A stretch of DNA of 64,000 bases, from NCBI GenBank assembly GCA_002269645.1, contig NIVC01001593.1, forward strand, positions 177,960 to 241,959. Direction: 5' to 3'. The notes beneath the pieces were generated by a model. The model did no database searches, was not told the origin of the DNA, and worked only from the letters and a program-made list of their open reading frames with translations. This DNA comes from Macrostomum lignano. Lineage: Eukaryota. The position numbers were made by a program, and so were the translations under genes. Below, one piece after another: positions 8,617-63,630 of the stretch (within the stretch, counting starts at the first letter, position 1; every line of letters starts with the position of its first letter).

Positions 8617-8618
8617 GT

Positions 8619-16018: not shown

Positions 16019-16080
<62 letters not shown>

Positions 16081-16093
16081 CTCCCTCAATTCT

Positions 16094-16155: not shown

Positions 16156-16158
<3 letters not shown>

Positions 16159-17129: not shown

Positions 17130-18190
17130 TCCTACCTCTCCTTCACCTCTCCCTCACCTCTCCCTCACCTCTCCCTCACCTCTCCTTCACCTCTCCCTCA
17201 TCTCTCCCTCACCTCTCCCTCACCTCTCCTTCACCTCTCCCTCATCTCTCCCGCTCCTCTCCCTCATCTCTCCCTCACCTCTCCTTCACCTCTCCCTCAT
17301 CTCTCCCTCACCTCTCCCTCACCTCTCCTTCACCTCTCCCTCATCTCTCCCTCACCTCTCCCTCACCTCTCCTTCACCTCTCCCTCATCTCTCCCTCACC
17401 TCTCCCTCACCTCTCCCTCACCTCTCCCTCACCTCTCCTTCACCTCTCCCTCATCTCTCCCTCACCTCTCCCGCTCCTCTCCCTCATCTCTCCCTCACCT
17501 TTCCCTTATCTGTCCCTCACCTTTCCCTTATCTGTCCCTCACCTTTCCCTAATCTCTCCCTCACCCCTCCCTCATCCCTCCCTCACCTTTCCCTCATCTC
17601 TCCCGCTCCTCTCCCTCACCTCTCCCTCACCTCTCCCGCTCCTCTCCCTCACCTTTCCCTTATCTGTCCCTCACCTTTCCCTAATCTCTCCCTCACCCCT
17701 CCCTCATCCCTCCCTCACCTTTCCCTCATCTCTCCCGCTCCTCTCCCTCACCTCTCCCTCACCTCTCCCTCATCTCTCCCGCTCCTCTCCCTCACCTCTC
17801 CCGCTCCTCTCCCTCACCTCTCCCGCTCCTCTCCCTCACCTCTCCGCTCCTCTCCCTCATCTCTCCCTCACCTCTCCCGCTCCTCTCCCTCATCTCTCCC
17901 TCACCTCTCCCGCTCCTCTCCCTCACCTCTCCCGCTCCTCTCCCTCACCTCTCCCTCACCTCTCCCGCTCCTCTCCCTCATCTCTCCCTCACCTCTCCCG
18001 CTCCTCTCCCTCACCTCTCCCGCTCCTCTCCCTCATCTCTCCCTCACCTTTCCCTCATCTCTCCCGCTCCTCTCCCTCACCTCTCCCTCACCTCTCTCGC
18101 TCCTCTCCCTTTCCTCTCCCTCATCTCTCCCTCACCTCTCCTGCTCCTCTCCCTCATCTCTCCCTCACCTTTCCCCCATCTCACCCTCAT
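17130..18190. repeat. 11-bp polypyrimidine minisatellite (CCTCTCCCTCA / CCTCTCCCGCT)n
   Basis: Seen directly; the same array recurs at 20562-20960. Confidence 0.95.
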
Positions 18191-20508: not shown

Positions 20509-20561
20509 NNNNNNNNNNNNNNNNNNNNNNNNNNNNNNNNNNNNNNNNNNNNNNNNNNNNN
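20509..20561. other. Assembly gap (53 N)
   Basis: Seen directly. Confidence 1.
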
Positions 20562-20960
20562 GCTCCTCTCCCTCACCTCTCCCGCTCCTCTCCCTCACCT
20601 CTCCCGCCTCCTCTCCCTCACCTCTCCCGCTCCTCTCCCTCATCTCTCCCTCACTCTCCGCTCCTCTCCCTCATCTCTCCCTCACCTCTCCCGCTCCTCT
20701 CCCTCACCTCTCCCGCTCCTCTCCCTCACCTCTCCCTCACCCTCCCGCTCCTCTCCCTCATCTCTCCCTCACCTCTCCCGCTCCTCTCCCTCACCTCTCC
20801 CGCTCCTCTCCCTCATCTCTCCCTCACCTTTCCCTCATCTCTCCCGCTCCTCTCCCTCACCTCTCCCTCACCTCTCCGCTCCTCTCCCTTTCCTCTCCCT
20901 CATCTCTCCCTCACCTCTCCTGCTCCTCTCCCTCATCTCTCCCTCACCTTTCCCCCATCT
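20562..20960. repeat. 11-bp polypyrimidine minisatellite, second copy
   Basis: Same units as 17130-18190. Confidence 0.93.
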
Positions 20961-22071
20961 CACCCTCATTTCTGCCTCGTTACTTCTTTTATTAATTACT
21001 AAAAAATAAGGCAACCCTCAGTAAATTAAAAAGGCAGGCATTGAAACACATAAAAAGCAGAGGCGATTTCTAAGGCCCGTTCAGATCCGCCCCATTAGTG
21101 CAAGTCATTTGGGAATTGGCTGCTTCAGTATGAAACAAACGGATTAAATCGTTGCTTTCTTTCTGTCGTCCCCTCTACTCTCCCCCGGCGAATGGGTTCG
21201 TTGCTTTGATTTATTATTCCTAGTATTTTTTTGGGTATTGCTCGCGACAGCAGCCTTTAAACGCATAGTTAATTAGCTACCTAACAATTCCACTCCATGC
21301 TTTCGTTAAAAACCTCATTGGTTTTTATAGCTGACTTTGAATTTTAGTTATTAGAATTTAAATAACTGCATTTTGAGAGAAAGCCTAGCAGTCCACAAAT
21401 CCCCCCACCCCAGCAAGCAAAATAAACTGAAGGGTCAGTTACCGATATGTAGCGTAAAAACGAAAAAAACAGACAGCTTCGAGTCCAATGCTAAGCTCCC
21501 GAATCGCTCAGTTTCTTCCTCAGGTTTTATTTCTGCTAATAAGCTATCGATTGATTTTTATAGAGAGCCAGCACTGCATCAGCCAGCCGGACTCGGCTCT
21601 TCTAGCTAGATAATTGACGACGCTAAAATAGGCGAGGCCTCCATAGAGACAGCCAGAGAGACCAGACAAAAAACTATATAAGCACGAACACAAAAAAGTT
21701 GATTTTGATTCATACCAAAAATGAGGATACTGCAACCATGGCAACAGTGAGTTACAACAATGAATTACTGAAATATAGTATCTAGAGATGGGGAACCGCC
21801 TGTCCTCAACAGCAACAGCTCACAGCGGGAGAATAAATGTACATCTACTGTCTTTTCACTGACCCAATGTCCCGGTGGACTTCTTTTCTATCAACAGATT
21901 GAAGGACCTTCGATCTATCAGCAAAAACTGGAAAATGTTTCCAGTGTCCGGCATGCTCGGACGAGAGAAACTCCTCCTTTGAGGCCCTTGCCGACCCTTC
22001 ACCATGGATCTCAAAGTCCCAATCCTCTGCTCAACCAGTCAAGAGTCGCCAAGAGTGAATCGGATTTCCCG

Positions 22072-24070
22072 TCAGCTGTCAGCATTCGGCAGCTTCTGAT
22101 GCGGTCGCGGCCCGGCGGCCACAGCCGGCAGCAGGACGTCCGCCTCCGAGCGGCTGGCCGCTCCATCGCACCTCCTGACGGCGGAGGCTCCGCCAACGCC
22201 GCGGCTCTGCCTGGTGCAAATTTCGTAGCAGTGGATGAAAAAGTCGATTAGCTCTACCACGGAGATCATTGTCAGGCCGACGAATATAGAGAACAAGCGC
22301 CAATCTGGCTCAGGAAGGAGGTCAGAGACAGGACCTCTTTTTCCTCAACCTTGTGCAGATCGAAGTTCGGCCGGATCAGCTGGATAGACAGCAGGTTCCG
22401 TTCCAGCAGGTTCTCGTGCTTCAGCATCTCGTAGGCCTCCTGGATGCTGCCGTTGTTATTCAGCTTTTCTATAGCCTTCCTGTAGGCCTTCATCTCCTTC
22501 CTGTTCAGCAGGCGGCTGTAGACCCGGCTGTTGAGCAGGCGCAGCTGGAACGACCTGGTCGGCCAGTCGGATGTCGACCGCTCGGTCTGGTAGCTGTAAA
22601 CGAGCAGGGCAGCGTGCAGCTCTCCACCACGTCCTTGGAGTACTTGGAAATGACGTCATTCTTGCAGCGGATATAGCCGTAGACTTTCTGCAGGGTGGCA
22701 CTGCAGTCGGCCAGCCGTTTCTGATCGTTCTCGGCCGTGGCCCAGTTGCAGCCGTCGCTGCGCAGAAACTCCTCCAGGCCGGTGCAGTAGGTGAAATTCG
22801 ATTCGCGCACCAGCGGATACTCGATGGCCTGGCAGCCGCAGGTATTGAGAATGTCCCGCTGGATTGTGGCCTGTCGGCAGGCGTCCTCGCTGTATTTGTA
22901 CTCCCGACCGAATAGGTTAAGATTCCTCTGCGTGTCCTGCGAGCACCGGCCGTAGGGCGCCTGCTTCTGAACGTTCAACACGTGTTTGAGCTTCACCTCG
23001 GTCAGGGAGCCGGCTTTCAGGTGGATGGCCTCGTGATTCACGTCCGGGTAGGTGTCGCCCGAGTGGATGGTGAGCACGGCTCCAGACAGCTGCGTGCTGA
23101 TGTCCATGGTGTAACAGTCTACGCAGTTGAAATTGTCGAGGTTCCATTCGTTGTCTAGGTAGACGGCCATCTCTACCATGGTGGTGTTGTCCCTCAACTC
23201 CTCGTGCAAGTCCAAGGTGTAGCAATTCATGTAGTTGCCGTGCAGGAAGGCGTGAAAGTTACCGGCGAACATGTCGGAGCCTTTGCCGCCCCAGACGTAC
23301 TCGGGACTGCAGAATTTCAGGTTGCGGGCGCTGCCGTTCCGGATGACCGCCCGACAGTCGAGAATAAAATCCTGGAGAGTGTGCCCGATGTCGCGGCTGG
23401 CGCTTCTTGGCAGGCTCTCCAGGTAGGCTGGGAAACCCATCGAGCCGGAGAAGTTGTAGTAAACGTACTTCGTTGACTCGTTATAGAAGTACAGGTTCCT
23501 GGCGAACAGTTCCAACGATTCGGAGAAGTCGCGCGGATATTTCCAGCCCTGCTGGCGCAGCTGCTGCCGGCCCTCAGAGGACAGCGGTCGCATATTGCAG
23601 AGCGTTACGGAGGGAAACGGCGAGCTGTAGTCCTTCAACACCCTGGGCGGGTGCATCACGTCGTACTCGATGAACTGCAGCGTCAAGAAGGACAGACAGA
23701 GGATGCAAGCGACGAACAGGGCTACCACGAAGAAGATCCAGAGCAACCGGATGCGCCGGCTCTCCGATTTGATGATGCGCGGAATTCCTCGGATAGTGGT
23801 GTTCTCGCAGAAGCAGATGAACTGGCGGTGCAGGGCGCTGCGGACTGGGGCCAAGTCCGACTGCCCGGCAGTCGCCGCTCCAAAAGAAGCTACAGCAGAG
23901 GCTTCCGCGTCGGCATCCGTGGGGTCAGCGTCGGCCTCGACGGCCCGATTATTGGTCTGGACGGTGTACTTGTGCAGCGGAGAGTTACGGCGCTGTTCAT
24001 TGCCGCACTGTCGGGCGCTGCAATTGCGACAGCGAGTTCCGCGTCCTGTCGACTTCTGCGTTTCATTCAA
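22072..24070 (-). CDS. Intronless DEG/ENaC (amiloride-sensitive sodium channel / ASIC-like) family protein, ~666 aa after correcting two 1-nt gaps
   Basis: FCENTTIRGIPRI, TM1 LLWIFFVVALFVACILCLSFL, FPSVTLCNMRP, MNCYTL, GAVLTIH, a Cys-rich thumb, and TM2 FLSQIGGLFSIFVGLTMISVVELIDFF. The two missing bases (near 22298 and 22598) are present in duplicate copy 1. Confidence 0.92.
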
Positions 24071-25946
24071 CAGAGGCCGGCAGCTCTTCGGTTCTGCTGA
24101 TTCTCTGTATGGCGCGATCGCGAAGGAAATGGATTAGAAGTCCGCGAGAGGGAATGCTGGCGTCGGGTGGGCAGTGGGGATATTTTAAAAACGGGAAGAG
24201 AGGTAGCAAGACTATACGCGGATAGTTTGGAAGCCTAGCCCTAGACGGCCAATGGCAGGCGAAACAGCGGCTTGATTGGCTCTCGGTGACGGTTTGATGC
24301 CTGTACGGTACTCAACTGAGCTGGTGTGTCACGGACAACTGGCTAAAGCTAATGGCAAAACTGCGCAGTGAAGTGGAAGCAGCAAGTTGTAAAATCATAT
24401 TGTGTTTTGAAAAAGTCTAATTCTACTTTTTTTGCTCACGCAGGCTCATTTAATGCAGAAATACATAACTATCAATAAAATAAATCAATTCAACTGGCTA
24501 AATGGTGACAAAAGGAGCATCCCTATTTTCTACTTCAATTACTTACTCGTAGCTACGGGAGAATACTGCATGGGCATTGTAGTGGTCTGCAGTGCTGATT
24601 GACATGCCTCTAAGGGCCTCGCCGTGGACGCATACAGTGGGAGTTTTTGTATCCAGTTGACGAAAGCCCGAAGTTTCTGCTGCAGCAGGAATGAGGATGG
24701 AAGCAAATGCCACAGATTATATAGCTGCAGGCACTGGCAGGGGCTGCACACGTTCGAGTTTTAGTCTGTCTGGAAAAACTGGCTGATATTTTTTCAGATT
24801 GATAAATTCAGAGCCTCTGGTTGGGAGACTGAGCCAGTAAAAAGTGGTCTGTTTGGCAGATGACACAGGGTGCAACGCGCATTTTGGACTTACCTTAGAG
24901 CGTTTTCTTACTTGCTAGGTTTGAGAGTTTGAGAGTTTAGTCAATCGGAGCAGAGTCCAGTCCTGTACAACATCATCTTTATACTTACTGGCACAGCCAA
25001 AGTCCTCTATAGTGGTCTTCAACCCTCTGGTAAAGCTGTGGAACAGTCCCAATTGCCTCACATAAAAGAACATCGGTGTTAAAGCAACCGTCATTCCCAG
25101 AAGTAATTGCTTTGTTGTTAATTAATCTCCGAGAGCTATGCATCAGAAAAATATTGCGATCGAAAATCCAGGACCAAACTCCCCATGGGATAGTTTATTC
25201 TACAAAGATGGCATTGTTATAAAAATCAATCTGATAGCCTTGCAATGCAGCCATCTGAATTATGAAATCGGGTGCAGCTCACAGAGCCCCTTCCGTCGGG
25301 AGGAAGCAAGGGACGGTCCGAGAATGGCCGGGATCGGGCGGCGGAACAAGAGAGCACGAACGCTGCTTTTTTATGCTTTTCATTCACCCGGCCGCCGCGG
25401 GTCCCATGTCGAATACGACAGCCAGCCCTACTCGAGTCTGCTTGAGATCATAAAATTGCGGTCCGGTCGGTGTAGGAAGAGGGAATGAGCCAGATCCGAG
25501 CCCGATGAGATTCATGAGGCAAGCAGATGAATGCTCAAGATACTGCAGTGCAGGCTGATGGCAATCTGCTCAACCATTCAAGCTCCACAATGAGCAGGTC
25601 CATCTCCCAGTCTTCCGCCCCAATGCAGTCCGTGAAGAATGTGCAAATTCAGGCAGCAAGGCGTGCATGATCAAGGGGGACAGGATGATATGCCAATCTT
25701 CTTGTCTTCACAATTCATGAATGCATGGCTTTCCTACCGAATATTGTTCATCCCAGTGTCGAATGACGAGAATATTGCAAGTGAATGCACGAGAAGGATG
25801 CTCACAAAGCCGCACAAGTCCGTGACTTTGCGAGCTTCATATATAGCCATGTGTGCATCTAATCATACTTGAACACCTGTTTTTATATCGGACGAGTACA
25901 CGTGTAGAATACTTACATGATTTCTACATACAAATTTACAGTAGTA

Positions 25947-26644
25947 CGAGGGTTGTCCCAGAAATAGCGGGAAAAACCGGTATAGAAGCTGACTGTGATA
26001 TTCGAATTTTATGCAACTTGCGTCATAAGTAGAAAAAAATCCAATGGTTGTTTTGCTTTTTAAATGAGGTAAAAATGTCAATTCATTAAAAAGTTATGCC
26101 TATAATTAGAACAAGGGGTAAGGGGGTAGAGTTACACCAAGTCGAGCCTACTATGCTGGCCATAGACTAAACTTTTGATGCTTAGTCAGAACCATAGATA
26201 CTATATAACTATATAACTGTATATAGATATATAAATATCTATGGTCAGAACCATCGATTCGAAAACAGAAGCAAACGAAGAAGCTGAAGAGAAACAAAAG
26301 AGCACATAAGCCCTCGAAAAAAGCAGGAGCTAATCTGAAGCAGAAGCAGAAGCAGAACAGCTGCAGGCTACAGGCTGAGGGTTGACTTCGTCGAAAAGTC
26401 ATCAGTCAAGGGCGATGGCGATGCTGCGTGACCGACTTTGCAGACCCCTCGACTTGGTGTAACACTACCCCCTACCCCTTGCTCTAATTATAGGCACAAC
26501 TTTTTAATGAATTGGCATTTTTACCCCATTTAAAAAGCAAAACAACCATTGGATTTTTTTACTTATGACGCAAGTTGCATCAAATTCGAATATCACAATC
26601 AGCCTCTGTACCAGTTTTTCCCGCTATTTCTGGGACAACCCTCG
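25947..26644. mobile_element. Tc1/mariner-type MITE, 698 bp, ~200-bp TIRs, TA target duplication
   Basis: TA|CGAGGGTTGTCCCAGAAATAG ... CTATTTCTGGGACAACCCTCG|TA. Arms 25947-26146 and 26448-26644 are imperfect inverted repeats. Confidence 0.9.
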
Positions 26645-28494
26645 TAGAATGACGGCAGTTCAGTATTTACATGTGGCACATCCTGCGCGGTTGAATTATC
26701 ATAGCTACATGTATATAAACGTGTCCAAAAATAGTCCCGTCGACTCCGCTAAGCTAAGCTAAGCTACAGACAAGGGCGGAGCGTTTAAATGAAATATGCA
26801 ACGCCTGCAGTTAGCTACGGCTCTTATATAGCTACATGTTTCGACAAACAGGCGGTCGAATTTAAAATGCATTATGGACCCTGTTGTTTATAGCCTAGTC
26901 CATATAGTAGTAATATTAGATAATCGAATTTCAAGCGCCCGGCTTTGCATGCTTTTTTAATTTTTTCTTGGTTCCAGACTTAAGAGAGCTGAGAAACAGA
27001 GGAACAGAGAAGTGGAGAGAGTGCTTCAGATTTGGCGTGTAAGCTTTTAAACGCATGAATATATCGATCTTGACGGGCAAGGCCCTCCATCTTCTGGTAG
27101 CTGGCCTCCAGCTCCTCCGCTTGGGATGTCGACGTCAGAAAATTAATAAGAAGCTGTAACCACAAGCACCGCAGGGTGTCCACTGTATAAGCCTTTACTC
27201 TCTATATAGCATACGGGAGTTGTAGAGCATACACGCAAAGCTAACACACACAGGTCTTGTATGCATGTTAGTGAGCAAATAGACCGCACATGCTCAGGCC
27301 TGCTGCATTGATGGCGTTTTGTATGGGGTTTTTTAGGCAAATTGCGTTTGTTGTGCCACAGTGAAAACTTCTAGGATATTAGCTGCAGAGCCTCAAATAG
27401 ATTTTTAGCTCGGGATCAAGCAGGTGAACGCGCGCTGGCCAGAGTCAGTTTATCTAAGCACGCTTCGGCTAGCAGATTAGTGTATGCAGAGACCATACAA
27501 GCCCCGTTAGGGAAACAGCAAGCTTCATAGAGAAATCGTTTGATTAGCAATTCGCTCGAATGACAATTGCGTCAGGGGTGGACTAAAAACAATATTAATA
27601 ATCACCGGCCTCTATTGCACGGCCTCGGTGCAAGTTTGCCAAGAGTAAACACGGATCTCGTCACCTCGATATGCAATTTTTATAGCAATGGCTTGCAAGC
27701 GAATTGACATAGGCTTTTCTTTCTACACAAAATGTGAACTAACTTCTTTTTTTTAGCCTGCAAGATTTGCGCAGGTCAGGTAATCATCGATTGCCCCGGT
27801 GTTGCCAACCAGCTGATTGATAGTAGAGGTCGCATGACTTGTGCACTGAGAACAAGGACCGTTGGAAGGAATGTACACTCGTAGGATGAGGTTGCTTCAT
27901 CCTATGAAAAATAGAACAAAGTAGCTACCTCAGGAAGACTCTCAAAATGTACAGAACAAGCAAATTCCGTTGATCCATTTTGAAATACTAAATTTGTGTC
28001 ACGTAAATTATGAATAAACATAAATTTCCCTTATCTTCTTTAAAACTTTCTGGAAGTCTTTCTACATCTTAATCAGTTAAAAATAATGTAAAAGAAAAAA
28101 ATTAAACTGCAATTCATTTATTACAGGAGATTAGAGAAGATCATTGTTAAATCAACAGCAAACGCCACTCACGATATATTTTCGTTACTCGCAATATCTA
28201 GATATTGACAGAAAGCAGATACATAACAATTAGTTTAAGTAATTCGTGGCGCCCTAGCAGTCAGTAGCTGGCACAAGAAACTGTCCAAAATAAAATGAGC
28301 AATTGGCAATTTTATAAAAAAGAAAACTCCTCATAGGTAAAATACATACATCTCGTCACAAAACGGAATTAATAAGATGGTGAATAAAAGTTTAATGGAA
28401 TGAATGCATCAATTTTCTTTATTTTTCCATAGAAAATAAAACATTTAATCGTAAATCTCATGCATAGACAGCACTTGCAAAAACTCTTAGTTAT

Positions 28495-29691
28495 TTAGAC
28501 TTCCGCACACACGCACAGCTTTGATAGTCCGCTGAGATTGGAGTCGCTGACTGCCTCCTCGGCTGCTGACACTGGCTGGCTGCCGGCATCTCCAGCTGCT
28601 GACACTGGCTGGCTGCCGGCATCTCCAGCTTCTGACACTGGCTGGCTGCCGGCATCTCCAGCTTCTGACACTGGCTGGCTGCCGGCATCTCCAGCTGCTG
28701 ACACTGGCTGGCTGCCGGCATCTCCAGCTGCTGACACTGGCTGGCTGCCGGCATCTCCAGCTGCTGACACTGGCTGGCTGCCGGCATCTCCAGCTTCTGA
28801 CACTGGCTGGCTGCCGGCATCTCCAGCTTCTGACACTGGCTGGCTGCCGGCATCTCCAGCTGCTGACACTGGCTGGCTGCCGGCATCTCCAGCTGCTGAC
28901 ACTGGCTGGCTGCCGGCATCTCCAGCTGCTGACACTGGCTGGCTGCCGGCCAAGCAGTAAAAGATAGACACAGCGGATTGGCTTTCAATCTGACAGGCGG
29001 TAAAGCCGACCCGCTGAAGTGCATCAGCCAGTGCCTCGGAAGTGATGTCAATCACCAGTACAAGCTTGTACCGGGCAGCCAGGTGAGGCCACAGGTCTGG
29101 CTCGGCGTTGACTGAGTGGGCAAAGCTCAGCACCACCAGGTCAGCATCTGGCAGCAGTTTGGCAGCGTCGGCGGAATTTTTAACACAGCCAGCTTTGAAC
29201 CATAGGCTGTATGGCAGTCGCTGCTCTCTTAGCTGCTCATCTATACTCGAGATTAGCGGCTGCCAGCCGCCGCACCGGTCTACCAGGAACATGACGAGAG
29301 GCTCGGCTGGCCCGGCGCTGTGGTGGTGCCGCCTAGCCAACAGAGCGATAGCATCGGAGCCGGGGCCGCAGCCGACGCAGACGCCAGTTTGGCTGCTTAG
29401 CAACACCCGATTGACAGCTTCAACATTGGAGACCGCCTCTAGAGATTTCGCTGAGATGCCAACAGACCAGGGCAGCTTGTTGATGGCGTAGCAACAGCGG
29501 AATAGCTCGTCATCGTAATATTCATAGTGCTGCTGTTTCCACTTCTTCTGCTCCCACTCGTTATAACGAAGCCAGCCCCGGCTGCGGCTGTCCCGATTGC
29601 GGTCGAGTTTCTCCTGGGCGCAGCGGTGCACTGCCTTGGTTAGAACTGAGCTGAGCCAGGCGCCACTGCCGCCAGCATCCGCACCCTGCAT
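28495..29691 (-). CDS. Intronless class I SAM-dependent methyltransferase-like protein (398 aa) with an 11-aa repeat C-terminus
   Basis: Motif I-like VCVGCGPGSD, acidic post-beta2 FLVDRC, DADLVVLSF and LVLVID. AG acceptor at 29711-29712 and an in-frame upstream stop support the ATG at 29691. Fold assignment is inferred from motifs. Confidence 0.7.
   Translation of the reverse strand: MQGADAGGSGAWLSSVLTKAVHRCAQEKLDRNRDSRSRGWLRYNEWEQKKWKQQHYEYYDDELFRCCYAINKLPWSVGISAKSLEAVSNVEAVNRVLLSSQTGVCVGCGPGSDAIALLARRHHHSAGPAEPLVMFLVDRCGGWQPLISSIDEQLREQRLPYSLWFKAGCVKNSADAAKLLPDADLVVLSFAHSVNAEPDLWPHLAARYKLVLVIDITSEALADALQRVGFTACQIESQSAVSIFYCLAGSQPVSAAGDAGSQPVSAAGDAGSQPVSAAGDAGSQPVSEAGDAGSQPVSEAGDAGSQPVSAAGDAGSQPVSAAGDAGSQPVSAAGDAGSQPVSEAGDAGSQPVSEAGDAGSQPVSAAGDAGSQPVSAAEEAVSDSNLSGLSKLCVCAEV
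28563..28950. repeat. 33-bp coding minisatellite, ~12 copies, encoding AGSQPVS(A/E)AGD
   Basis: Seen directly; variant order is AAAEEAAAEEAA. Confidence 0.95.
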
Positions 29692-34938: not shown

Positions 34939-35655
34939 GATTCAACGGACTGAATGAACGGATAGACAACTGCTTGATTGATTGAACTGAGTGAACGGAC
35001 AGACAACTGCTTGATTGATTGAACTGAGTGAACGGACAGACAATTTCTTGATTGAACTGAGTGAACGGACAGACAATTTCTTGATTGAACTGAGTGAACA
35101 GACAGACAATTACTTGATTGATTGAACTGAATGAACGGACAGACAACTGCTTGATTGAACTGAATGAACGGACAGACAATTGCTTGATTGATTGAACTGA
35201 ATGAACGGACAGACAATTGCTTGATTGATTGAACTGAATGAATGGACAGACAACTGCTTGATTGAACTGAATGAACGGACAGAAAACTTGATTGAACTGA
35301 GTGAACGGACAGACAATTGCTTGATTGAACTGAGTGAACGGACAGAAAACTTGATTGAACTGAGTGAACGGACAGACAATTGCTTGATTGAACTGAGTGA
35401 ACGGACAGACAATTGCTTGATTGAACTGAGTGAACGGACAGACAACTGCTTGATTGAACAGAATGAACGGACAGACAACTGCTTGATTGAACAGAATGAA
35501 CGGACAGACAACTGCTTGATTGAACTGAATGAACGGACAGACAATTGCTTGATTAAACTGAATGAATGGACAGACAACTGCTTGATTGAACTGAATGAAC
35601 GGACAGACAATTGCTTTATTAAACTGAATGAATTAATAGACAACTGCTTGAATAA
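34939..35655. repeat. 33-bp minisatellite (TTGATTGAACTGARTGAACGGACAGACAAYTGC) with 30- and 37-bp variants
   Basis: Seen directly. Confidence 0.93.
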
Positions 35656-38300: not shown

Positions 38301-45427
<7,127 letters not shown>

Positions 45428-48509: not shown

Positions 48510-49006
48510 GGTGGTCAAGGGATCACAAGGGGGATTGCATGGGTGGTCAAGGGATCACAAGGGGGAATGCACGGGTGGTCAAGGGATCACAAGGGGGATT
48601 GCATGGGTGGTCAAGGGATCAAGGGGGATAGCACGGGTGGTCAAGGGATCAAGGGGGATAGCACGGGTGGTCAAGGGATCACAAGGGGGATTGCACGGGT
48701 GGTCAAGGGATCACAAGGGGGATTGCACGGGTGGTCAAGGGATCACAAGGGGGATTGCACGGGTGGTCAAGGGATCACAAGGGAGATTGCATGGGTGGGT
48801 GGTCAAGGGATCACAAGGGAGATTGCACGGGTGGTCAAGGGATCACAAGGGGGATTGCACGGGTGGTCAAGGGATCACAAGGGAGATTGCACGGGTGGTC
48901 AAGGGATCACAAGGGGGATTGCACGGGTGGTCAAGGGATCACAAGGGGGATTGCACGGGTGGTCAAGGGATCAAAAGGGGGATAGCACAGGTGGTCAAGG
49001 GATCAA
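48510..49006. repeat. 32-bp G-rich minisatellite (GGGTGGTCAAGGGATCACAAGGGGGATTGCAC)
   Basis: Seen directly; period 32 (48661 to 48693). Confidence 0.94.
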
Positions 49007-55510: not shown

Positions 55511-57213
55511 TTGAAGGAATGCTGAAAGTTGATTATAGTGCTCAATATGATTAATAATTTTAAAATTGAAAACAGGGTTCACATTAACACACTACTTGCA
55601 TATGAGTAGGTGGTTTGCCTATGGTTAATTTTTTAAAGCATTGTTTTTGTGCATTTTTTGAAATGTGTTTGAATGATTTTTTTGCTTTTGTTTGTAGGCC
55701 TATTGTTAAATATTGTCAATGTTGTGTATAGCATATAATAGGTAAGCATGGCATGCAAAAGGTGTGCAAACAAAAGACTCTTTAGTATACTTTCTGGCAT
55801 GCATACAATATGATCTGGAGACTAGACTAGAGTAGGCCTATGGTGCATAGGGCCTATACATTGAAAATGGCAAATAGGCCTACCCTTGTTGTACTATAGG
55901 AAATCCTAGTATACATGTTGCCTTCCAAACTATGGGCTATGCTAGTGTCCCTAGTATAATTATAAAGCCAAGTTTTTGGCTAGGCCAATTCTAGTTATAG
56001 GCCTTGCTTGCATTATTTATTTTGTAAATATTTTTATAAGAAATAAAAAGCATAACTATGTGCAAAAATAATCATTGTGCCTAAATTCTAAAACTAAAAT
56101 GCAAAATACATTACAAAAATAATGAAAAATTAGGATACCAAGAGTTTTTTTTTACTTTTTAGTTCTTATTACTTGATCAAATTTAAAAAGTTATGCAGTA
56201 GGACTCATATTTTGTTCTAAAAAATATTAACATTTTTGTAAGTAAAATTCTTGCCAAATAACATTTATACAAATATTTTGTTTTAATATGATATTTGTTT
56301 TAATGACAATGTAGTAACTTTTGTTTTAGCAAGTCGAATAATTTGTTTTAACTAAATGTTGTTTAAATGAATGTAATACAAGCCAATAGAGAGGTTTCAT
56401 TTAGTACAAATATAAGGCAAGAAACTAAACATTTTCTTTAACTCCTTTGTTGGGTTCAATACTCAGTAACTTCAAAATTAGGCCTAAGGTTTCTCTGGTT
56501 TTATTGTCTTAGGCCTAATTAGTTAAATATATAAGTAAGATTGTAAGTTTAGAAAGACCATGTTGGATATAAAAGGCATTTTGCCAATATAGTTAAGCAG
56601 GGATTGCCAAACAAGCATTTTGCTGAGTAAAAAGGGTGGATTGCCTAGTAAGAAGGGAGGATTCTCCAGGACTAGATCTAGGCTATTACAAGTGTGATAC
56701 AGTATTAAGTTGGAAAAAACAGTATTAAAGCTAGAAACCCCTTGGTCAGTGAAACGCTATGTTTGGACTAAGTAGTTTAGAAATTAGTAATAATTAGTAA
56801 GTATAGTAGTCAGCAGTGTCTTGCTGCTTGGGCACTGAAGCTTCCAGGGTAACTTGTACTGACAATAGCCCATATACGTATATATAGGTATAATTAATAG
56901 GATTCCTAGTCCTAGGGTTAGAAATAATAAACTTTGTACAATTTAGTGGAGCCTTAATAGAGAGAAGTTTTGCCCTAGTACAACTTGGTGGCATTAGTAA
57001 CTAGGCACAATTACACCTGTAACAGTAACAGTAGTAAAGATGCAGGGATTCCCCGAGCGATATTCAAGATCGATTTTCGGAAATAACAAAAATCTTTGCT
57101 TTTAAAGCACCAAACGCTATGATTTTTTACAGAAAAAACATCACCCACGAGATAAACCGACTTGAAAAAAATTACGGCTACAGATAGAAAGGATTTTTTA
57201 CAATTTGCAAAAA

Positions 57214-59333
57214 ACTGATGTTCCTATCTCCGCAATGTATTAGATTGATATTCGATTTCGAGTACTTCTGCTTGCTCTCTGTCGCTGAAAATTGACATGC
57301 AGGACTTCACCCAGACACTAAGCGATTATCATAACTCAAACCGAACTCAAAGCTTCATGCTCGAGAACTATTCGAGAAAAACTGATGTTCCTATCTCCGC
57401 AATGTATTAGATTGATATTCGATTTCGAGTACTTCTGCTTGCTCTCTGTCGCTGAAAATTGGCATGCAGGACTTCACCCAGACACTAAGCGATTATCATA
57501 ACTCAAACCGAACTCAAAGCTTCATGCTCGAGAACTATTCGAGAAAAACTGATGTTCCTATCTCCACAATGCATTAGATTGATATTCGATTTCGAGTACT
57601 TCTGCTTGCTCTCTGTCGCTGAAAATTGGCATGCAGGACTTCACCCAGACACTAAGCGATTATCATAACTCAAACCGAACTCAAAGCTTCATGCTCGAGA
57701 ACTATTCGAGAAAAACTGATGTTCCTATCTCCGCAATGTATTAGATTGATATTCGATTTCGAGTACTTCTGCTTGCTCTCTGTCGCTGAAAATTGACATG
57801 CAGGACTTCACCCAGACACTAAGCGATTATCATAACTCAAACCGAACTCAAAGCTTCATGCTCGAGAACTATTCGAGAAAAACTGATGTTCCTATCTCCG
57901 CAATGTATTAGATTGATATTCGATTTCGAGTACTTCTGCTTGCTCTCTGTCGCTGAAAATTGACATGCAGGACTTCACCCAGACACTAAGCGTTTATCAT
58001 AACTCAAACCGAACTCAAAGCTTCATGCTCGAGAACTATTCGAGAAAAACTGATGTTCCTATCTCCGCAATGTATTAGATTGATATTCGATTTCGAGTAC
58101 TTCTGCTTGCTCTCTGTCGCTGAAAATTGACATGCAGGACTTCACCCAGACACTAAGCGATTATCATAACTCAAACCGAACTCAAAGCTTCATGCTCGAG
58201 AACTATTCGAGAAAAACTGATGTTCCTATCTCCACAATGCATTAGATTGATATTCGATTTCGAGTACTTCTGCTTGCTCTCTGTCGCTGAAAATTGGCAT
58301 GCAGGACTTCACCCAGACACTAAGCGATTATCATAACTCAAACCGAACTCAAAGCTTCATGCTCGAGAACTATTCGAGAAAAACTGATGTTCCTATCTCC
58401 GCAATGTATTAGATTGATATTCGATTTCGAGTACTTCTGCTTGCTCTCTGTCGCTGAAAATTGACATGCAGGACTTCACCCAGACACTAAGCGATTATCA
58501 TAACTCAAACCGAACTCAAAGCTTCATGCTCGAGAACTATTCGAGAAAAACTGATGTTCCTATCTCCGCAATGTATTAGATTGATATTCGATTTCGAGTA
58601 CTTCTGCTTGCTCTCTGTCGCTGAAAATTGGCATGCAGGACTTCACCCAGACACTAAGCGATTATCATAACTCAAACCGAACTCAAAGCTTCATGCTCGA
58701 GAACTATTCGAGAAAAACTGATGTTCCTATCTCCGCAATGCATTAGATTGATATTCGATTTCGAGTACTTCTGCTTGCTCTCTGTCGCTGAAAATTGACA
58801 TGCAGGACTTCACCCAGACACTAAGCGATTATCATAACTCAAACCGAACTCAAAGCTTCATGCTCGAGAACTATTCGAGAAAAACTGATGTTCCTATCTC
58901 CGCAATGTATTAGATTGATATTCGATTTCGAGTACTTCTGCTTGCTCTCTGTCGCTGAAAATTGGCATGCAGGACTTCACCCAGACACTAAGCGATTATC
59001 ATAACTCAAACCGAACTCAAAGCTTCATGCTCGAGAACTATTCGAGAAAAACTGATGTTCCTATCTCCACAATGTATTAGATTGATATTCGATTTCGAGT
59101 ACTTCTGCTTGCTCTCTGTCGCTGAAAATTGGCATGCAGGACTTCACCCAGACACTAAGCGATTATCATAACTCAAACCGAACTCAAAGCTTCATGCTCG
59201 AGAACTATTCGAGAAAAACTGATGTTCCTATCTCCGCAATGTATTAGATTGATATTCGATTTCGAGTACTTCTGCTTGCTCTCTGTCGCTGAAAATTGGC
59301 ATGCAGGACTTCACCCAGACACTAAGCGTTTAT
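57214..59333 (+). repeat. Left subterminal array of a 167-bp unit, ~12.7 copies
   Basis: ACTGATGTTCC starts at 57214, 57381, 57548 ... 59218 (12 x 167). Confidence 0.97.
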
Positions 59334-59475
59334 TTGCACTGAATAAATTATAATTTAGATGAAACTCAATTAGCTCTTTAATCTTATCATTTAATTAAAT
59401 CATTAGACTATAGTCTAATAGTCATGCATATTTAATGCTGCACAAAGTTAGGCCATTGACTTGTATGGTAATCGA

Positions 59476-61018
59476 TCAGCTGAGTAAATTGATGCAGGTC
59501 GAGCAGCAGAAGTTTTCCTCTTCTTGCGTTGTGGATGCACAGACGCAGTGGATCCAGTCAAGACAGAATGAGCACTCAATCTACCAGTAGTGCATGTACA
59601 AGAAGTAAAGGTAAAGTGAGTACATGTGTATGGATATTTGGCACAGAGGTGTTTATACATACAAGAATTTTACAACTCACCCAATCAATTGTTGCTGCAC
59701 CGTCTGCTTTTGGCGGCTCTTCTGCTTGACAAATTGCACAAGAACCTTGGTTGCTATCGACGGAGTTGTTACTGATTACTTTCCATATGTAACAACGCAC
59801 TTTCTCAAGAAAGTCTTTGCTTGCTTTCTGATATTGTAGCTCCCTACCAAGAATTATGCTTCTGGCATACAAGCAGACGAAGGCACCACAACTAAAAGAA
59901 TCGTCTTGCTTAGTGTGTGGAGCGCTGCCACTGCGAAAAGTAGTATTTTCTTTGAGTGAAAAATACTCGTAGATTTCTTTTGGTGCCAGACGTAGAAAAG
60001 CACTACAATTGGTGTTCGGAAAAGCTTACATGGATGTGTATCCTTACATTCATAATTGTCTTATCTGAAGTCAAAGGTTGAAAGGAAAAGCTTCTTACTT
60101 CCAGTTTTCTACAATTCTGGGCAACACATTCTGCTGGCGGATATTACTGGTAGAGGAGTCGAAGAGGTAAACATTTCTAGCTGATACGTTAATCGCTACC
60201 AGGTAAAAATGGCTTCCAGTAAACATGGGAACCAAAATCAAACGGACTTCCTAAAAATGAAATAATTCGGGAAACGTCAAAATCAAATTACATAGCTAAA
60301 TAGATTTTCTTGCGTGCTTAACTCACCCTCAGAAGGTGACCCTCAGAAGGTCTAGGGGGAGTGCTAACCGGAGGAGGGTGACCCTCAGAAGGTCTAGGGG
60401 GAGTGCTAACCGGAGGAGGGTGACCCTCAGAAGGTCTAGGGGAGTGCTAACCGGAGGAGGGTGACCCTCAGAAGGTCTAGGGGGAGTGCTAACCGGAGGA
60501 GGGTGACCCTCAGAAGGTCTAGGGGGAGTGCTAACCGGAGGAGGGTGACCCTCAGAAGGTCTAGGGGGAGTGCTAACCGGAGGAGGGTGACCCTCAGAAG
60601 GTCTAGGGGGAGTACTAATCAAAGGAATGCGGCCCTCAGAGAAAGTTCCAGTCAATCCGGCCAATTCATTTTTTTCTTTTGTTCTTTTGCGAATCCAGTG
60701 GAACATCATGGCTCGATTGCGTATGGTATTCCTCAAATTTAGTCGTTCTGCGATGTAGCAGAAGATGGGAGCCGAAGCTTTAAAACTACGAGGCGTTGCA
60801 AACTTTTTTATTCCATCAGTCACAACGCTATCGATCTGTAAATCGTCCAAATTTCGAGGCATTTCGTAGCTATGAAATAAAATTTACAAATGGCTACTAT
60901 GCCACAAAGATTAAGATGTGACACAGGGACAAAAAGTGGCTTACCTCATCTTTTGGCGGAATACTTTGAGCCAACAGTAAGCAACATACAAAGAAGAGAA
61001 ATGACCTAACAAAGAAGC
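59476..61018 (-). CDS. Ulp1/SENP (peptidase C48)-like cysteine protease + C-terminal PHD finger. Exons 61018?-60945, 60869-60327, 60250-60099, 60002-59681, 59580-59476; 5' end unresolved; one 1-nt frameshift in a G run near 60440 as assembled
   Basis: LDDLQIDSVV; LILVPMFTGSHFYLVAIN (His); YLFDSS (Asp); KQDDSFSCGAFVCLYA (Gln/Cys); PHD CAIC...DW|IECSFCLDWIHCVC...FCCSTC. GT-AG introns are phase-consistent once one G is restored. Confidence 0.82.
60326..60632. repeat. 42-bp coding minisatellite, ~7 copies (PPRPSEGHPPPVST), inside the Ulp1 gene
   Basis: Units start at 60340, 60382, 60424 (41 bp), 60465, 60507, 60549 and 60591. Confidence 0.95.
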
Positions 61019-61523
61019 CTGTCATTCGTGAACGTGAAACTATTCCTGAAACAATTCGTGAAACTAATAATTAGACGCAGCAAATTTTCTTCAAAGCTTA
61101 TTTTCAAAATCAGTAGCTACAGAGTGATTTTGAGTGGGTCCAATTTGACGCAAAATTGTATCCAGCCCTGTCCGAAGAAATATATCAGTCAAATGTGCAG
61201 TGCAAAAAGTATTTCAGCGCAGAAAATACGGGTGTACCGATGTTTGATTGCACGGCTGAAACTGTACGAACAGTCCAAGTAGGCAGGTCAGTGTACACAA
61301 CGCGAAAAAGTTTAATAGTGCTGCATGGCTTAATGAAATCAATTAAACTGATTGAACCCAATGAGTCAGTGTTTACTAGTAGAGAATCTTTAAAAAATTA
61401 TTGTAAATCAGCCAATATATGTACATCATGCATGCAAACATCTTACTATATATTCACACAAATGAACAAAATTATTATCCCAATCTAATGCACTGTGGAG
61501 ATACATGTACATGTACATGTAGA

Positions 61524-62033
61524 AACATCAGTTTTTCTCGAATAGTTCTCGAGCATGAAGCTTTGAGTTCGGTTTGAGTTATGATAATCGCTTAGTGTCT
61601 GGGTGAAGTCCTGCATGTCAATTTTCAGCGACAGAGAGCAAGCAGAAGTACTCGAAATCGAATATCAATCTAATACATTGCGGAGATAGGAACATCAGTT
61701 TTTCTCGAATAGTTCTCGAGCATGAAGCTTTGAGTTCGGTTTGAGTTATGATAATCGCTTAGTGTCTGGGTGAAGTCCTGCATGCCAATTTTCAGCGACA
61801 GAGAGCAAGCAGAAGTACTCGAAATCGAATATCAATCTAATACATTGCGGAGATAGGAACATCAGTTTTTCTCGAATAGTTCTCGAGCATGAAGCTTTGA
61901 GTTCGGTTTGAGTTATGATAATCGCTTAGTGTCTGGGTGAAGTCCTGCATGTCAATTTTCAGCGACAGAGAGCAAGCAGAAGTACTCGAAATCGAATATC
62001 AATCTAATACATTGCGGAGATAGGAACATCAGT
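61524..62033 (-). repeat. Right subterminal array of the 167-bp unit, ~3 copies, inverted
   Basis: The AGT of AACATCAGT falls at 61530, 61697, 61864 and 62031. Confidence 0.97.
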
Positions 62034-62405
62034 TTTTTGCAAATTGTAAAAAATCCTTTCTATCTGTAGCCGTAATTTTTTTCAAGTCGGTTTATCTCGT
62101 GGGTGATGTTTTTTCTGTAAAAAATCATAGCGTTTGGTGCTTTAAAAGCAAAGATTTTTGTTATTTCCGAAAATCGATCTTGAATATCGCTCGGGGAATC
62201 CCTGCATGTAGTAAAGTGTATTTTTACTCAGGCAAGTGAGATTTATCAAATGAAATAAAAAATACAAAAAAACTTTTAAAATCTCACTAGATTCCCTAAC
62301 TAATGTAATAGACTTGTTTTAAATTTTATAAAGGTTTCAGTTCTAGTAATACTAATACTGATATAGTAGAAGTTCATTTTATATCTGTGATCTATTCTAG
62401 TCCCT

Positions 62406-62458
62406 CGCGCTGTACTTCTTATAATGCGGAGGTTGTGAGTTCGATCCGCGCCCGGGCA
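62406..62458 (+). pseudogene. 5'-truncated tRNA-like fragment resembling the tRNA-Ile(TAT) 3' half
   Basis: GCGCTGTACTTCTTATAATGCGGAGGTTGTGAGTTCGATCC contains a B box; the acceptor stem and D arm are missing. Confidence 0.4.
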
Positions 62459-63390
62459 GATAATTTTTTTATAGGCGTAGGGTTAGCATCCCCTGGCTTT
62501 AATTGTAAGATGAGAAAGCAAAGCAAAATTGTTATAAGACTTTATTGTTTATTTACGTGATGATAGTGCAAATGCCAAGCCTAATAAGGAGGAAAAAGGA
62601 ATTTATGATGTGACCTACTAAAATACTTTTTTTAATTGAAACTGCGGCACAGAAAGCTAAGATTTTAATAATATTCTAGTCTGAATACAGACAATATATC
62701 TATCATCTCTTATCTTTTTCATTAGAGTAATTATTCATATTTGTTAGTGGTATTTACTAACGCCTGACATCTACTTTGACATTTTGTTTTATCGTAGGTT
62801 TCTTAGAAACTGTATAAAACGCGTGCTTATTCGCCAATTTAGTTGAAATCGTCCTTTTTGGATTTTCCTTTTGGTGTTGGCAGGGGCGGATTTAGGAGGG
62901 AGGCAATGGTCTGCATCGCATCCCCGTCACTTCTGTTTATCTTAAATAAAAGTTTGGTTTGATGCTGGTGTTCTTTAACAGAGAAGTTTTACATGTCTAA
63001 TACAGTATGTGCTCCTCACGATCCGTAGTCCGCCACCGCGGCGGCAGGCAGGAATTCCCAACTTAGCTTCACGAATGAGGCTCATGCAGAAAGATGAAGC
63101 TAAGAAGGCTAAATTCGGTGTCGTAAATGTACCGAATGTATATTAAATAAATGTAAATGTATATTAAACTCTGCATGTCCAATGGCCCATTTTCATACGA
63201 GTACAAAGCAAATACAAGTGACAAGTGACAATAATTTCGGTTTCATAAGTTTTGAGCAACTGCACTTGCTTGGTAAGCTGAGCAAGAGGACAATCAATTG
63301 CAGCGCTGTCTATGGCCGAAATGGGTGTCCAATTACTTCCCCCGTCATATTCTTTTAACCATAGGGTAAGGCCATAGACAGCTTAAACTA

Positions 63391-63630
63391 GGTTGTAGCC
63401 TAGTGGTTGGAGCGTCGGACTCGTCGGAGCGAAGGTCGGGGGTTCGATTCTCGAACCATTCGGAACAATTTGTGTCCTTGAGCAAGATACTCTGCATTGC
63501 TTCAGTTCACCCAGTTGTAAAATGGGTGCCAGCTGGGCTAATTCAGGATGTGTGTGGCGACCCTCAGTCCTTGTACTGAGCATCCTTACGCAGCCTTCAG
63601 ATGCGCCGCGCAATAGCTGCGGCTGAGCTG
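63391..63630 (+). mobile_element. tRNA-derived CORE/Nin-like SINE, second copy
   Basis: Same head, core and 3' segment CGCAGCCTTCAGATGCGCCGCGCAATAGCTGCGGCTGAGCTG as 50115; no tail. Confidence 0.83.

What the first reader, a model, noticed from the sequence alone, without database searches (positions are those of the whole stretch)
57040..62207. Young foldback/MULE-like element with satellite-built TIRs carrying a SUMO-protease-PHD gene instead of a transposase
Seen: exact 9-bp TSD (GTAGTAAAG), apparently identical 174-bp termini, inverted arrays of a 167-bp unit, and a ~2.2-kb core with a spliced Ulp1+PHD gene. Known: 9-bp TSDs with repeat-built long TIRs characterise Mutator-superfamily and Drosophila FB-type foldback elements, and plant Kaonashi MULEs carry Ulp1-like proteases. 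Inference: this may be an undescribed animal family that moves a chromatin-targeted deSUMOylase, possibly as an anti-silencing factor (SUMOylation is required for piRNA/KAP1-type TE silencing), and is mobilised in trans.
Basis: partly seen in the sequence, partly recalled or inferred. Interest (0 to 1): 0.88.

Follow-up and report, generated by a model that had tools for sequence, protein, structure and literature searches.

The report
Young foldback transposon carrying Ulp1-PHD gene
A 5.2-kb, very recently inserted, transposase-less DNA transposon in a Macrostomum flatworm genome has satellite-built inverted ends and carries a SUMO-protease-like gene with a PHD finger. This build is already known from Rehavkus/Mutator-type elements, so it is a neat new example rather than a new class.

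Summary
The element spans 57040-62207 and is flanked by an exact 9-bp duplication (GTAGTAAAG). Its inverted arms match over 688 nt, and the first 526 nt are identical. Each arm has a 170-bp unique terminus followed by a 167-bp array: 12.7 copies on the left, 3.1 on the right. The 2.2-kb core holds a spliced minus-strand gene for a Ulp1 (Peptidase_C48) protease ending in a C4HC3 PHD finger. There is no transposase. One 1-bp deletion in an internal 42-bp coding repeat breaks the frame.

The host is Macrostomum lignano or a very close relative.

A 9-bp duplication, long inverted repeats with subterminal satellite arrays and a PHD finger are the published hallmarks of Rehavkus/MULE foldback elements. 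Ulp1(+PHD) domains are already reported on animal MuDR and Ginger1 transposases. The family is therefore not a new category.

New here:
- It is a flatworm example.
- The Ulp1-PHD gene stands alone, as in plant Kaonashi MULEs.
- Homologous Ulp1-PHD genes in oysters are also flanked by inverted tandem arrays.
- A fused transposase-like/Ulp1/PHD protein occurs in another eukaryote.

The mobilising transposase, the copy number and any anti-silencing role remain untested.

The parts
57031..57039 (.). Left target-site duplication, GTAGTAAAG
   Evidence: Read directly from the sequence; identical to 62208-62216.
57040..57209 (+). Left unique terminal segment of the TIR. It begins with the 18-nt terminal motif ATGCAGGGATTCCCCGAG.
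   Evidence: Perfect reverse complement of 62038-62207. The motif was found by the scan.
57210..59333 (+). Left subterminal array, 12.7 copies of a 167-bp unit. Each unit carries the motif ATGCAGGACTTCACCCAG.
   Evidence: TRF score 4150 with 98% matches. Units differ from the consensus at 0-2 positions. Motif copies are listed.
59334..61519 (-). Unique core: the Ulp1-PHD gene, about 570 bp of upstream sequence and about 140 bp of downstream sequence. No transposase.
   Evidence: Six-frame translation. Other core ORFs have no Pfam match. tblastn with a transposase-like N-terminus finds nothing in the element.
59476..59580 (-). Last coding exon: second half of the PHD finger (IECSFCLDWIHCVCAS...FCCSTC) and the TGA stop at 59478-59476.
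   Evidence: AG acceptor at 59582-59581. The phase-0 intron after the PHD Trp sits at the same position in homologue L002.
59681..60002 (-). Exon with the Ulp1 Gln/Cys catalytic motif (KQDDSFSCG) and the first half of the PHD finger (CAIC...TIDW).
   Evidence: Used as the query, with a best hit of 54% identity.
60099..60250 (-). Exon with the Ulp1 His and Asp motifs (GSHFYLVAI...LFDS).
60327..60869 (-). First coding exon (ATG at 60862-60860): N-terminal part of the Ulp1 domain plus the Pro-rich repeat.
   Evidence: GTGAGT donor at 60326-60321.
60335..60618 (-). In-exon 42-bp tandem repeat, 6.8 copies encoding PPPVSTPPRPSEGH. One unit is 41 bp (G4 instead of G5 at 60439-60442), which causes a frameshift.
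   Evidence: TRF, unit spacing 42,42,41,42, and restoration of the frame by adding one G.
60945..60953 (-). 3' end of a putative upstream (5'UTR) exon, with a GTAAGC donor at 60944-60939.
   Evidence: Splice motifs read from the sequence. Inferred, with no transcript evidence.
61481..61519 (-). Degenerate partial 167-bp unit interrupted by a (CATGTA)n stretch, at the inner edge of the right arm.
   Evidence: (D9, I18).
61520..62037 (-). Right subterminal array, 3.1 copies of the 167-bp unit, inverted relative to the left array.
   Evidence: TRF score 1022 at 99%; inverted pairs I1-I15.
62038..62207 (-). Right unique terminal segment of the TIR.
62208..62216 (.). Right target-site duplication, GTAGTAAAG

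Best explanation
This is a very recent insertion of a non-autonomous cut-and-paste DNA transposon of the foldback type in the genome of Macrostomum lignano or a sibling species. By architecture it belongs with the Mutator-like/Rehavkus group.

Shown:
- A staggered 9-bp cut at the target left the GTAGTAAAG duplication.
- Each end consists of a 170-bp terminus followed by tandem 167-bp units.
- Every unit repeats an 18-nt version of the extreme terminal motif.

Inferred:
- These motif copies are reiterated binding sites for a transposase.
- That transposase must be supplied in trans by an autonomous relative elsewhere in the genome, because the element encodes none.

The only gene is a spliced Ulp1-type (C48) cysteine protease with an intact His/Asp/Gln/Cys catalytic set, fused to a C-terminal PHD finger. 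This Ulp1-PHD module is a recurrent transposon accessory module rather than a captured host SENP gene. The same Ulp1-to-PHD junction is found in three other settings:
- other Macrostomum genes;
- oyster genes flanked by inverted tandem arrays;
- the C-terminus of a 1212-aa transposase-like protein inside a TIR/TSD-bounded element of another eukaryote.

Inferred function: the PHD finger brings the protease to chromatin. There it removes SUMO or a related modifier from host or transposase proteins during or after transposition.

This particular copy carries a 1-bp frameshift in its coding repeat. It is either already a pseudogene or the assembly has a homopolymer error.
For: Structure of the element:
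- TSD, TIR, arrays and reiterated terminal motif.
- No transposase in the element or anywhere in the window.

Gene:
- Peptidase_C48 lies above the Pfam cut-off, and SENP1/SENP5 are the best solved relatives.
- The PHD pattern is read from the sequence.

The Ulp1-PHD module family:
- Exhaustive HMMER search with exon 4 and the cluster look-up give the following relatives. P0016 is 54% identical. M. lignano UniRef A0A1I8HHF3 and its relatives are 40% identical. Oyster proteins and the 1212-aa P0031 are also hit.
- In alignment A1 the catalytic Gln and Cys and the first PHD cysteines are invariant.
- The intron position is conserved in L002.

Other genomic settings of the module:
- P0031 lies in an element with CACGTCCTATTTTC/GAAAATAGGACGTG termini, an 8-bp TSD and a 186-bp satellite next to its 3' end. 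A second copy ends at the same terminus.
- The oyster Ulp1-PHD genes lie between inverted 31-bp arrays at two different loci.

Literature:
- Rehavkus has a 9-bp TSD, 26-400-bp TIRs, a PHD finger and a minisatellite (PMC6446971).
- Rehavkus elements carry satellite arrays in their inverted termini, including a 164-bp unit in Rehavkus-1_TC.
- Animal MULEs Muta1-14 have 8-9-bp TSDs and long TIRs with subterminal repeats, and have many non-autonomous derivatives.
- Ulp1/PHD domains occur on MuDR and Ginger1 transposases of animals.

Host identification.
Against: - Only one copy and one TSD were seen, so the TSD length and mobility of the family rest on a single insertion.
- No transposase could be tied to these TIRs, so the superfamily assignment is by architecture only.
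- The two related settings that do include a transposase-like gene are not clearly MULE. P0031's N-terminus hits no Pfam transposase model, even at E<=10, and its element has an 8-bp TSD with short TIRs. The oyster genes sit beside KDZ/CxC4 transposase genes.
- The gene is frameshifted in this copy.
- No expression or activity data exist.
- Gene conversion between the arms could make the element look younger than it is.
Confidence: 0.6

Rival explanations
1. The Ulp1-PHD gene is only the leftover 3' part of a former transposase-Ulp1-PHD fusion gene. An internal deletion removed the DDE region. On this view the gene has no function of its own, and the element is an ordinary deletion derivative.
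For: - Fused architecture exists. P0031 is a single 1212-aa ORF with a transposase-like region followed by Ulp1 and PHD.
- The literature reports Ulp1/PHD at the C-terminus of MuDR and Ginger1 transposases.
- This copy is frameshifted, and so is the homologue L002.
Against: - The reading frame starts with its own ATG at the beginning of a complete Ulp1 domain. It has a plausible upstream exon and about 570 bp of upstream sequence.
- Stand-alone Ulp1-PHD proteins without a transposase part also occur in oysters as annotated genes, with all catalytic residues kept.
Confidence: 0.25
2. The element is mobilised by a non-MULE transposase, either KDZ/Zisupton-like or the unclassified P0031 type. The resemblance to Rehavkus/MULE would then be convergent.
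For: - In two oyster species the homologous Ulp1-PHD gene with its inverted arrays lies 1.3-2 kb from a KDZ/CxC4 transposase gene.
- P0031's transposase-like region matches no Pfam MULE model.
- Long TIRs built of tandem repeats also occur outside MULE. Galileo in the P superfamily is an example (from my own knowledge).
Against: - Published KDZ lineages make 7-8-bp TSDs, whereas this element has 9 bp.
- In oysters the KDZ gene lies outside the inverted arrays, and no termini or TSD could be resolved there.
- P0031's element has short 13-14-bp TIRs and a satellite at one end only, unlike this element.
Confidence: 0.15
3. This is a Pack-MULE-style capture of a host SENP/Ulp gene, with no relation to transposon biology.
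For: - Non-autonomous MULEs often carry host gene fragments.
- The gene has introns.
Against: - The closest relatives are all Ulp1-PHD fusions in multi-copy or repeat-flanked settings.
- Ordinary SENPs are only marginal matches (E about 0.006 in PDB).
- The first proteome-scale search returned no hit at E<=0.001.
Confidence: 0.06
4. It is not a transposon. It would instead be an assembly artefact or a palindromic satellite block.
For: - Perfectly identical inverted arms can arise from chimeric long reads.
- The window is full of minisatellites.
Against: - The arms are unequal (12.7 against 3.1 units).
- There is a unique 2.2-kb genic core.
- The flanks are unique on both sides.
- An exact 9-bp duplication sits at the precise ends of the inverted repeat.
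Confidence: 0.02

Closest known systems
Rehavkus elements (Repbase; placed in or next to the MULE superfamily), e.g. Rehavkus-1_TC and -3_TC of Tribolium, Rehavkus-1_HR of Helobdella
   Same: - 9-bp TSD.
- Long inverted termini that hold variable numbers of tandem satellite monomers. Rehavkus-1_TC has a 164-bp unit in arrays of 5 and 8 copies.
- A PHD finger in the encoded protein.
Sources.
   Different: - Rehavkus elements encode a DDE transposase, and this element encodes none.
- Ulp1 is not mentioned for Rehavkus in the papers read.
- Known hosts are arthropods and annelids, not flatworms.
- No sequence comparison with Repbase entries was possible.
Plant Kaonashi (KI-)MULEs and other ULP1-carrying MULEs (Hoen et al. 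2006; van Leeuwen et al. 2007, as cited in PMC2836005)
   Same: A Mutator-like element that carries a Ulp1-like protease gene. The point that KI-MULEs carry it in place of the mudrA transposase comes from my own knowledge.
   Different: - Plant lineage.
- To my knowledge they have no PHD fusion and no satellite-built TIRs.
- Homology to this gene was not tested.
MuDR-type transposons of Hydra and Branchiostoma, and Ginger1 (e.g. Ginger1-9_HM), with Ulp1 or Ulp1+PHD at the transposase C-terminus (Bao et al. 2010, PMC2836005)
   Same: Animal DNA transposons that carry the same Ulp1(+PHD) domain combination.
   Different: - In those elements the domains are fused to the transposase. Here they form a stand-alone gene.
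- Ginger1 makes 4-bp TSDs, which excludes Ginger1 for this element.
Foldback elements: Drosophila FB and Tetris; Aedes Muta1 (a 'type 2 foldback' MULE)
   Same: - Long inverted ends made of tandem repeats.
- 8-9-bp TSD for Muta1 and 9 bp for FB (from my own knowledge).
- Many non-autonomous derivatives.
   Different: - The repeat units are short in Muta1 (12 bp) and FB, against 167 bp here.
- None of them carries Ulp1-PHD.
Transposon-borne anti-silencing cargo: VANC of Arabidopsis VANDAL MULEs; TET/JBP dioxygenases on fungal KDZ and other transposons (PMC6446971, PMC12730594)
   Same: The concept of a DNA transposon carrying a chromatin- or epigenome-modifying enzyme.
   Different: - Different enzymes.
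- No evidence here that the Ulp1-PHD protein counteracts silencing.

Membership tests
MULE / Rehavkus | Target-site duplication of 8-10 bp (9 bp for Rehavkus) | tested here: met
   Exact 9-bp GTAGTAAAG on both sides. This is a single insertion only.
MULE / Rehavkus | Long TIRs with subterminal tandem repeats or a minisatellite | tested here: met
   688-nt inverted arms, each made of a 170-bp terminus plus 167-bp units. Compared with the descriptions.
MULE / Rehavkus | DDE transposase of the MULE/Rehavkus clade | not testable with these tools
   The element encodes no transposase. The host genome could not be searched for autonomous copies.
MULE / Rehavkus | PHD finger in the encoded protein (Rehavkus) | tested here: met
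   C4HC3 pattern at the C-terminus. The Pfam PHD_4 hit is only E=0.14. PHD fingers appear among the PDB hits.
MULE / Rehavkus | Multiple genomic copies with different TSD sequences of the same length | not testable with these tools
   - No other copy in the window.
- Metagenome, viral and prokaryote collections have no match.
- No eukaryote genome search is available.
Ginger1 (Ulp1/PHD-bearing) | 4-bp TSD and a Gypsy-integrase-like transposase | tested here: not met
   The TSD is 9 bp and there is no integrase.
KDZ / Zisupton | 7-8-bp TSD and a KDZ transposase | tested here: not met
   The TSD is 9 bp and the window has no KDZ gene. The neighbourhood seen in oysters keeps this open as a trans-acting candidate.
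Ulp1/SENP cysteine proteases (Peptidase_C48) | C48 catalytic domain with His, Asp, Gln and Cys | tested here: met
   PF02902 at E=8e-9, above the cut-off. The motifs SHFY, LFDS and KQDDSFSCG are present. Gln and Cys are invariant in alignment A1.
Ulp1/SENP cysteine proteases (Peptidase_C48) | Intact reading frame and SUMO-specific activity | tested here: inconclusive
   A 1-bp deletion in the 42-bp repeat shifts the frame, and this could be an assembly error. Substrate specificity cannot be read from the sequence.
Drosophila FB-type foldback | Inverted ends made entirely of short degenerate tandem repeats that reach the termini | tested here: not met
   The outer 170 bp are unique sequence, and the units are 167 bp long and nearly identical.

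The most novel reading that the evidence does not exclude
The Ulp1-PHD module may be a portable, chromatin-targeted deSUMOylase that several unrelated DNA-transposon lineages have picked up independently. Candidate lineages are MULE/Rehavkus-like, Ginger1, KDZ-linked elements in oysters and the P0031 type. Its proposed role is to blunt SUMO-dependent heterochromatin or piRNA-guided silencing in animal germline or stem cells. On this reading, elements such as this one would spread the factor on their own, as 'helper' elements without a transposase.
Probability: 0.15. Interest if true: 0.85.

Novelty: new variant of a known kind. Interest (0 to 1): 0.5.

Why it matters
Why DNA transposons from plants to cnidarians keep acquiring Ulp1 proteases has been an open question since the mid-2000s, and no function has been shown.

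- This element looks freshly transposed, because its arms are identical over 526 nt.
- It sits in Macrostomum lignano, a regenerating flatworm used as a laboratory model. To my knowledge the species is amenable to RNAi and transgenesis.
- An active family there would allow direct tests of whether the protease acts on SUMO, whether the PHD finger reads histone tails, and whether loss of the protein changes transposon silencing or mobility.
- It also extends Rehavkus-like architecture to flatworms.
- It adds a clear case of a transposon seeding and carrying a 167-bp satellite.

Tried and rejected
- Word-indexed proteome search with the spliced protein gave no hit. With profile A1 it gave only four hits.
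- Exact-protein look-up of the largest element ORF found nothing on record. The same was true for P0017 and P0021.
- DNA scans with the terminal 24-mer or a unit 30-mer gave 0 matches in metagenome, viral and prokaryote collections.
With A2 it returned one short, uninformative contig.
- Pfam on the remaining core ORFs found nothing. The bacterial promoter/terminator scan is not meaningful for a eukaryote.
- P0031's N-terminus against Pfam and PDB gave no transposase family. P0031 against the oyster KDZ region and the window gave no similarity.
- No termini or TSD could be defined for the oyster elements.
- Rfam found nothing in or beside the element.
- The terminal 170 bp shows only weak similarity to a 167-bp unit beyond the shared 18-nt motif: score 36.5 against a shuffle maximum of 32.5. 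I therefore do not claim that the terminus is a diverged unit.
- Structure prediction was not run. Only near-identical sequences were available for P0031, and the spliced protein is not accepted as input.


Full report
**1. What is in the sequence.**

The element runs from 57040 to 62207 (5168 bp). The nine bases GTAGTAAAG lie immediately outside both ends, at 57031-57039 and 62208-62216. The ends are inverted repeats. Arms 57040-57727 and 61520-62207 are complementary over 688 nt. The first 526 nt are identical, and there are only four mismatches further in.

Each arm starts with about 170 bp of unique sequence and then enters a tandem array of a 167-bp unit. The left array has 12.7 copies (57210-59333). 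The right array has 3.1 copies (61520-62037) in the opposite orientation. The units are almost identical, with 0-2 differences from the consensus and only four variable positions in all.

Each unit contains an 18-nt sequence (ATGCAGGACTTCACCCAG) that resembles the extreme terminus (ATGCAGGGATTCCCCGAG). The degenerate motif occurs 18 times in the 64-kb window, all inside this element, against none expected.

No other copy of the terminus or the unit exists in the window.

**2. The cargo.**

The 2186-bp core (59334-61519) holds one gene on the minus strand, with canonical GT-AG introns. The exons are:

| Exon | Coordinates (minus strand) | Content |
|---|---|---|
| Possible 5' exon | ends at 60945 | untranslated, inferred from splice motifs |
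| Coding exon 1 | 60869-60327 | ATG at 60862; N-terminal Ulp1 and Pro-rich repeat |
| Coding exon 2 | 60250-60099 | Ulp1 His and Asp motifs |
| Coding exon 3 | 60002-59681 | Ulp1 Gln/Cys motif; first half of PHD |
| Coding exon 4 | 59580-59476 | second half of PHD; stop codon |

- The product matches Peptidase_C48 (Ulp1) above Pfam's threshold (E=8e-9).
- Its best solved relatives are SENP1 and SENP5.
- His (SHFY), Asp (LFDS), Gln and Cys (KQDDSFSCG) are all present.
- The C-terminus reads C-x2-C-x19-C-x2-C-x4-H-x2-C-x11-C-x2-C, a PHD finger. The intron falls after the conserved Trp.
- The first coding exon contains 6.8 copies of a 42-bp repeat that encodes PPPVSTPPRPSEGH. One unit lacks a G (G4 at 60439-60442), which shifts the frame. 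Adding it back gives a 371-aa protein. I cannot tell whether this is a real mutation or a homopolymer error in the assembly.
- No transposase is encoded. Other core ORFs have no family match.

**3. Host.**

- A 521-aa ORF at 22505-24070 is 97% identical to an ENaC-type channel of Macrostomum lignano.
- The window is collinear with M. lignano scaffold NIVC01001392.1 at 93-99% DNA identity.
- The window therefore comes from M. lignano (another haplotype, homeologue or assembly) or a sibling species.

**4. Relatives of the gene.**

An exhaustive HMMER search with exon 4, followed by cluster look-ups, found a coherent family that shares the same Ulp1-to-PHD junction (alignment A1). The catalytic Gln and Cys and the first PHD cysteines are invariant across it.

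- **A 54%-identical gene on a short Logan contig (L002).** It has the same intron position but its own frameshift.
- **M. lignano UniRef proteins at 40% identity** (A0A1I8HHF3 and two relatives).
- **Stand-alone Ulp1-PHD proteins of oysters.** These have N-terminal tandem repeats.
- **P0031, a 1212-aa protein from JGI metagenome contigs.** Its C-terminus is Ulp1+PHD. Its N-terminal 800 residues look transposase-like by eye (CxxH and N-x-VE-x-W/F motifs) but hit no Pfam or PDB transposase.

**5. Genomic settings of those relatives.**

*P0031.* By comparing two copies (L001 and L005), the right end of the P0031 element could be fixed. Its 14-nt reverse complement was then found 16.9 kb upstream, together with a matching 8-bp duplication, GCAATATC. 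A 186-bp satellite of about 17 units sits just inside the 3' end only. This shows that the Ulp1-PHD module can be part of a transposase gene inside a bounded element with a subterminal satellite. [quoted passage not shown]

*Oysters.*
- The Ulp1-PHD gene lies between inverted arrays of a 31-bp repeat at two loci. One is in Crassostrea virginica and the other in C. angulata, and their upstream neighbours differ.
- In both species a convergent KDZ/CxC4 transposase gene follows 1.3-2 kb beyond the right array.
- I could not define termini or duplications there, so this remains suggestive.

**6. Comparison with what is known.**

*The architecture is not new.*
- Rehavkus elements, treated as MULE or its sister group, have 9-bp duplications, TIRs of 26-400 bp, a PHD finger and a minisatellite.
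- In Tribolium their inverted termini hold variable numbers of satellite monomers, including a 164-bp unit in the 9.5-kb Rehavkus-1_TC. These can seed long satellite arrays.
- Active mosquito MULEs have 8-9-bp duplications and long TIRs with subterminal repeats. They also have hundreds of non-autonomous derivatives with foreign internal sequence.

*The cargo is not new in kind either.*
- Ulp1 domains are reported on Mutator transposons of hydra, lancelet and plants.
- Ulp1 or Ulp1+PHD domains are reported on Ginger1 transposases.

*Exclusions by TSD length.* Ginger1 is excluded here by its 4-bp duplication. KDZ lineages make 7-8 bp.

*What I did not find described.* I found no description of an animal element in which a stand-alone Ulp1-PHD gene is the sole cargo between satellite-built TIRs. 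The closest analogue is the plant Kaonashi MULE. I also found no Rehavkus-like element reported from flatworms. No Repbase or Dfam search was possible.

**7. Mechanism.**

*Shown:* a staggered 9-bp target cut, reiterated terminal motifs in both arms, absence of a transposase, and an apparently catalytically complete C48 protease fused to a PHD finger.

*Inferred:*
- A transposase from an autonomous relative binds the terminal and subterminal motifs and moves the element in trans.
- Array length changes by unequal exchange, which would explain 12.7 against 3.1 units.
- The PHD finger targets the protease to chromatin. There it removes SUMO or a similar modifier from host or transposase proteins.

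Whether that helps transposition, DNA repair or escape from silencing is unknown. The anti-silencing reading is attractive by analogy with VANC and with transposon-borne TET/JBP enzymes. I give it about 15%.

**8. Verdict.**

This is a real, young, well-preserved element. I class it as a new variant of a known kind, of moderate interest. The missing pieces are copy number, other duplications, an empty site and the partner transposase. All of them need a search of the Macrostomum genome, which these tools do not offer. The homologous site in NIVC01001392.1 is the quickest test.

Noticed in passing
L007:6290-7710, 23133-24073 and 26022-27252; L008:8077-9461, 19056-22101 and 23420-28013: In two oyster species the homologous Ulp1-PHD gene is flanked by inverted arrays of a 31-bp repeat. 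In both it is followed by a convergent KDZ/CxC4 transposase gene. The upstream host genes differ between the two loci. This may be a composite transposon.
   Followed up: partly
L001:479-17348 (JGI 3300056999, contig Ga0558716_16351); second copy at L005: A 16.9-kb element with 13-14-bp TIRs (CACGTCCTATTTTC) and an 8-bp TSD (GCAATATC). It has a 186-bp satellite only at the 3' side. It encodes a 1212-aa intronless ORF that joins an unclassified transposase-like region to Ulp1 and PHD. The host organism is unknown.
   Followed up: partly
window 8359-34491 vs L010 (M. lignano NIVC01001392.1:76937-98934): The window is collinear with the public M. lignano scaffold at 93-99% identity, with indels in the minisatellites. 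It is therefore a second haplotype, homeologue or assembly. The site homologous to the insertion lies in the same 298-kb contig but could not be fetched.
   Followed up: partly
window 4300-10100 (minus strand): GC-rich (53-62%) ORFs that by eye look like the endonuclease, reverse-transcriptase and RNase H parts of a non-LTR retrotransposon. No family search was run on them. Part of the region is 99% identical to the public M. lignano scaffold.
   Followed up: no
window 1-3334, 13924-16161, 17134-18189, 28562-28950, 34949-35651, 41429-41826, 42276-42749, 43251-43972, 48510-49005: Unusually dense minisatellites with periods of 19-53 bp, some inside apparent coding sequence (for example the 33-bp repeat at 28562-28950). 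There is also a run of N at about 20.5 kb.
   Followed up: no
window 39749-39823 (minus strand) and 38862-39332 (minus strand): A tRNA-Arg(TCT) gene lies next to a 156-aa ORF that by eye resembles S-adenosylhomocysteine hydrolase. No family search was run on that ORF.
   Followed up: no
window about 62400-62460 and about 63390-63460: tRNA-like segments (GGTTCGATYC T-arm motifs) lie just right of the insertion and may be SINE heads. Neither ARAGORN nor Rfam calls them.
   Followed up: partly
L002:97-477 and 861-1015 (Logan SRR31628392): A 54%-identical Ulp1-PHD homologue with the same phase-0 intron after the PHD Trp. It carries a frameshift before that Trp. The source organism is unknown.
   Followed up: partly
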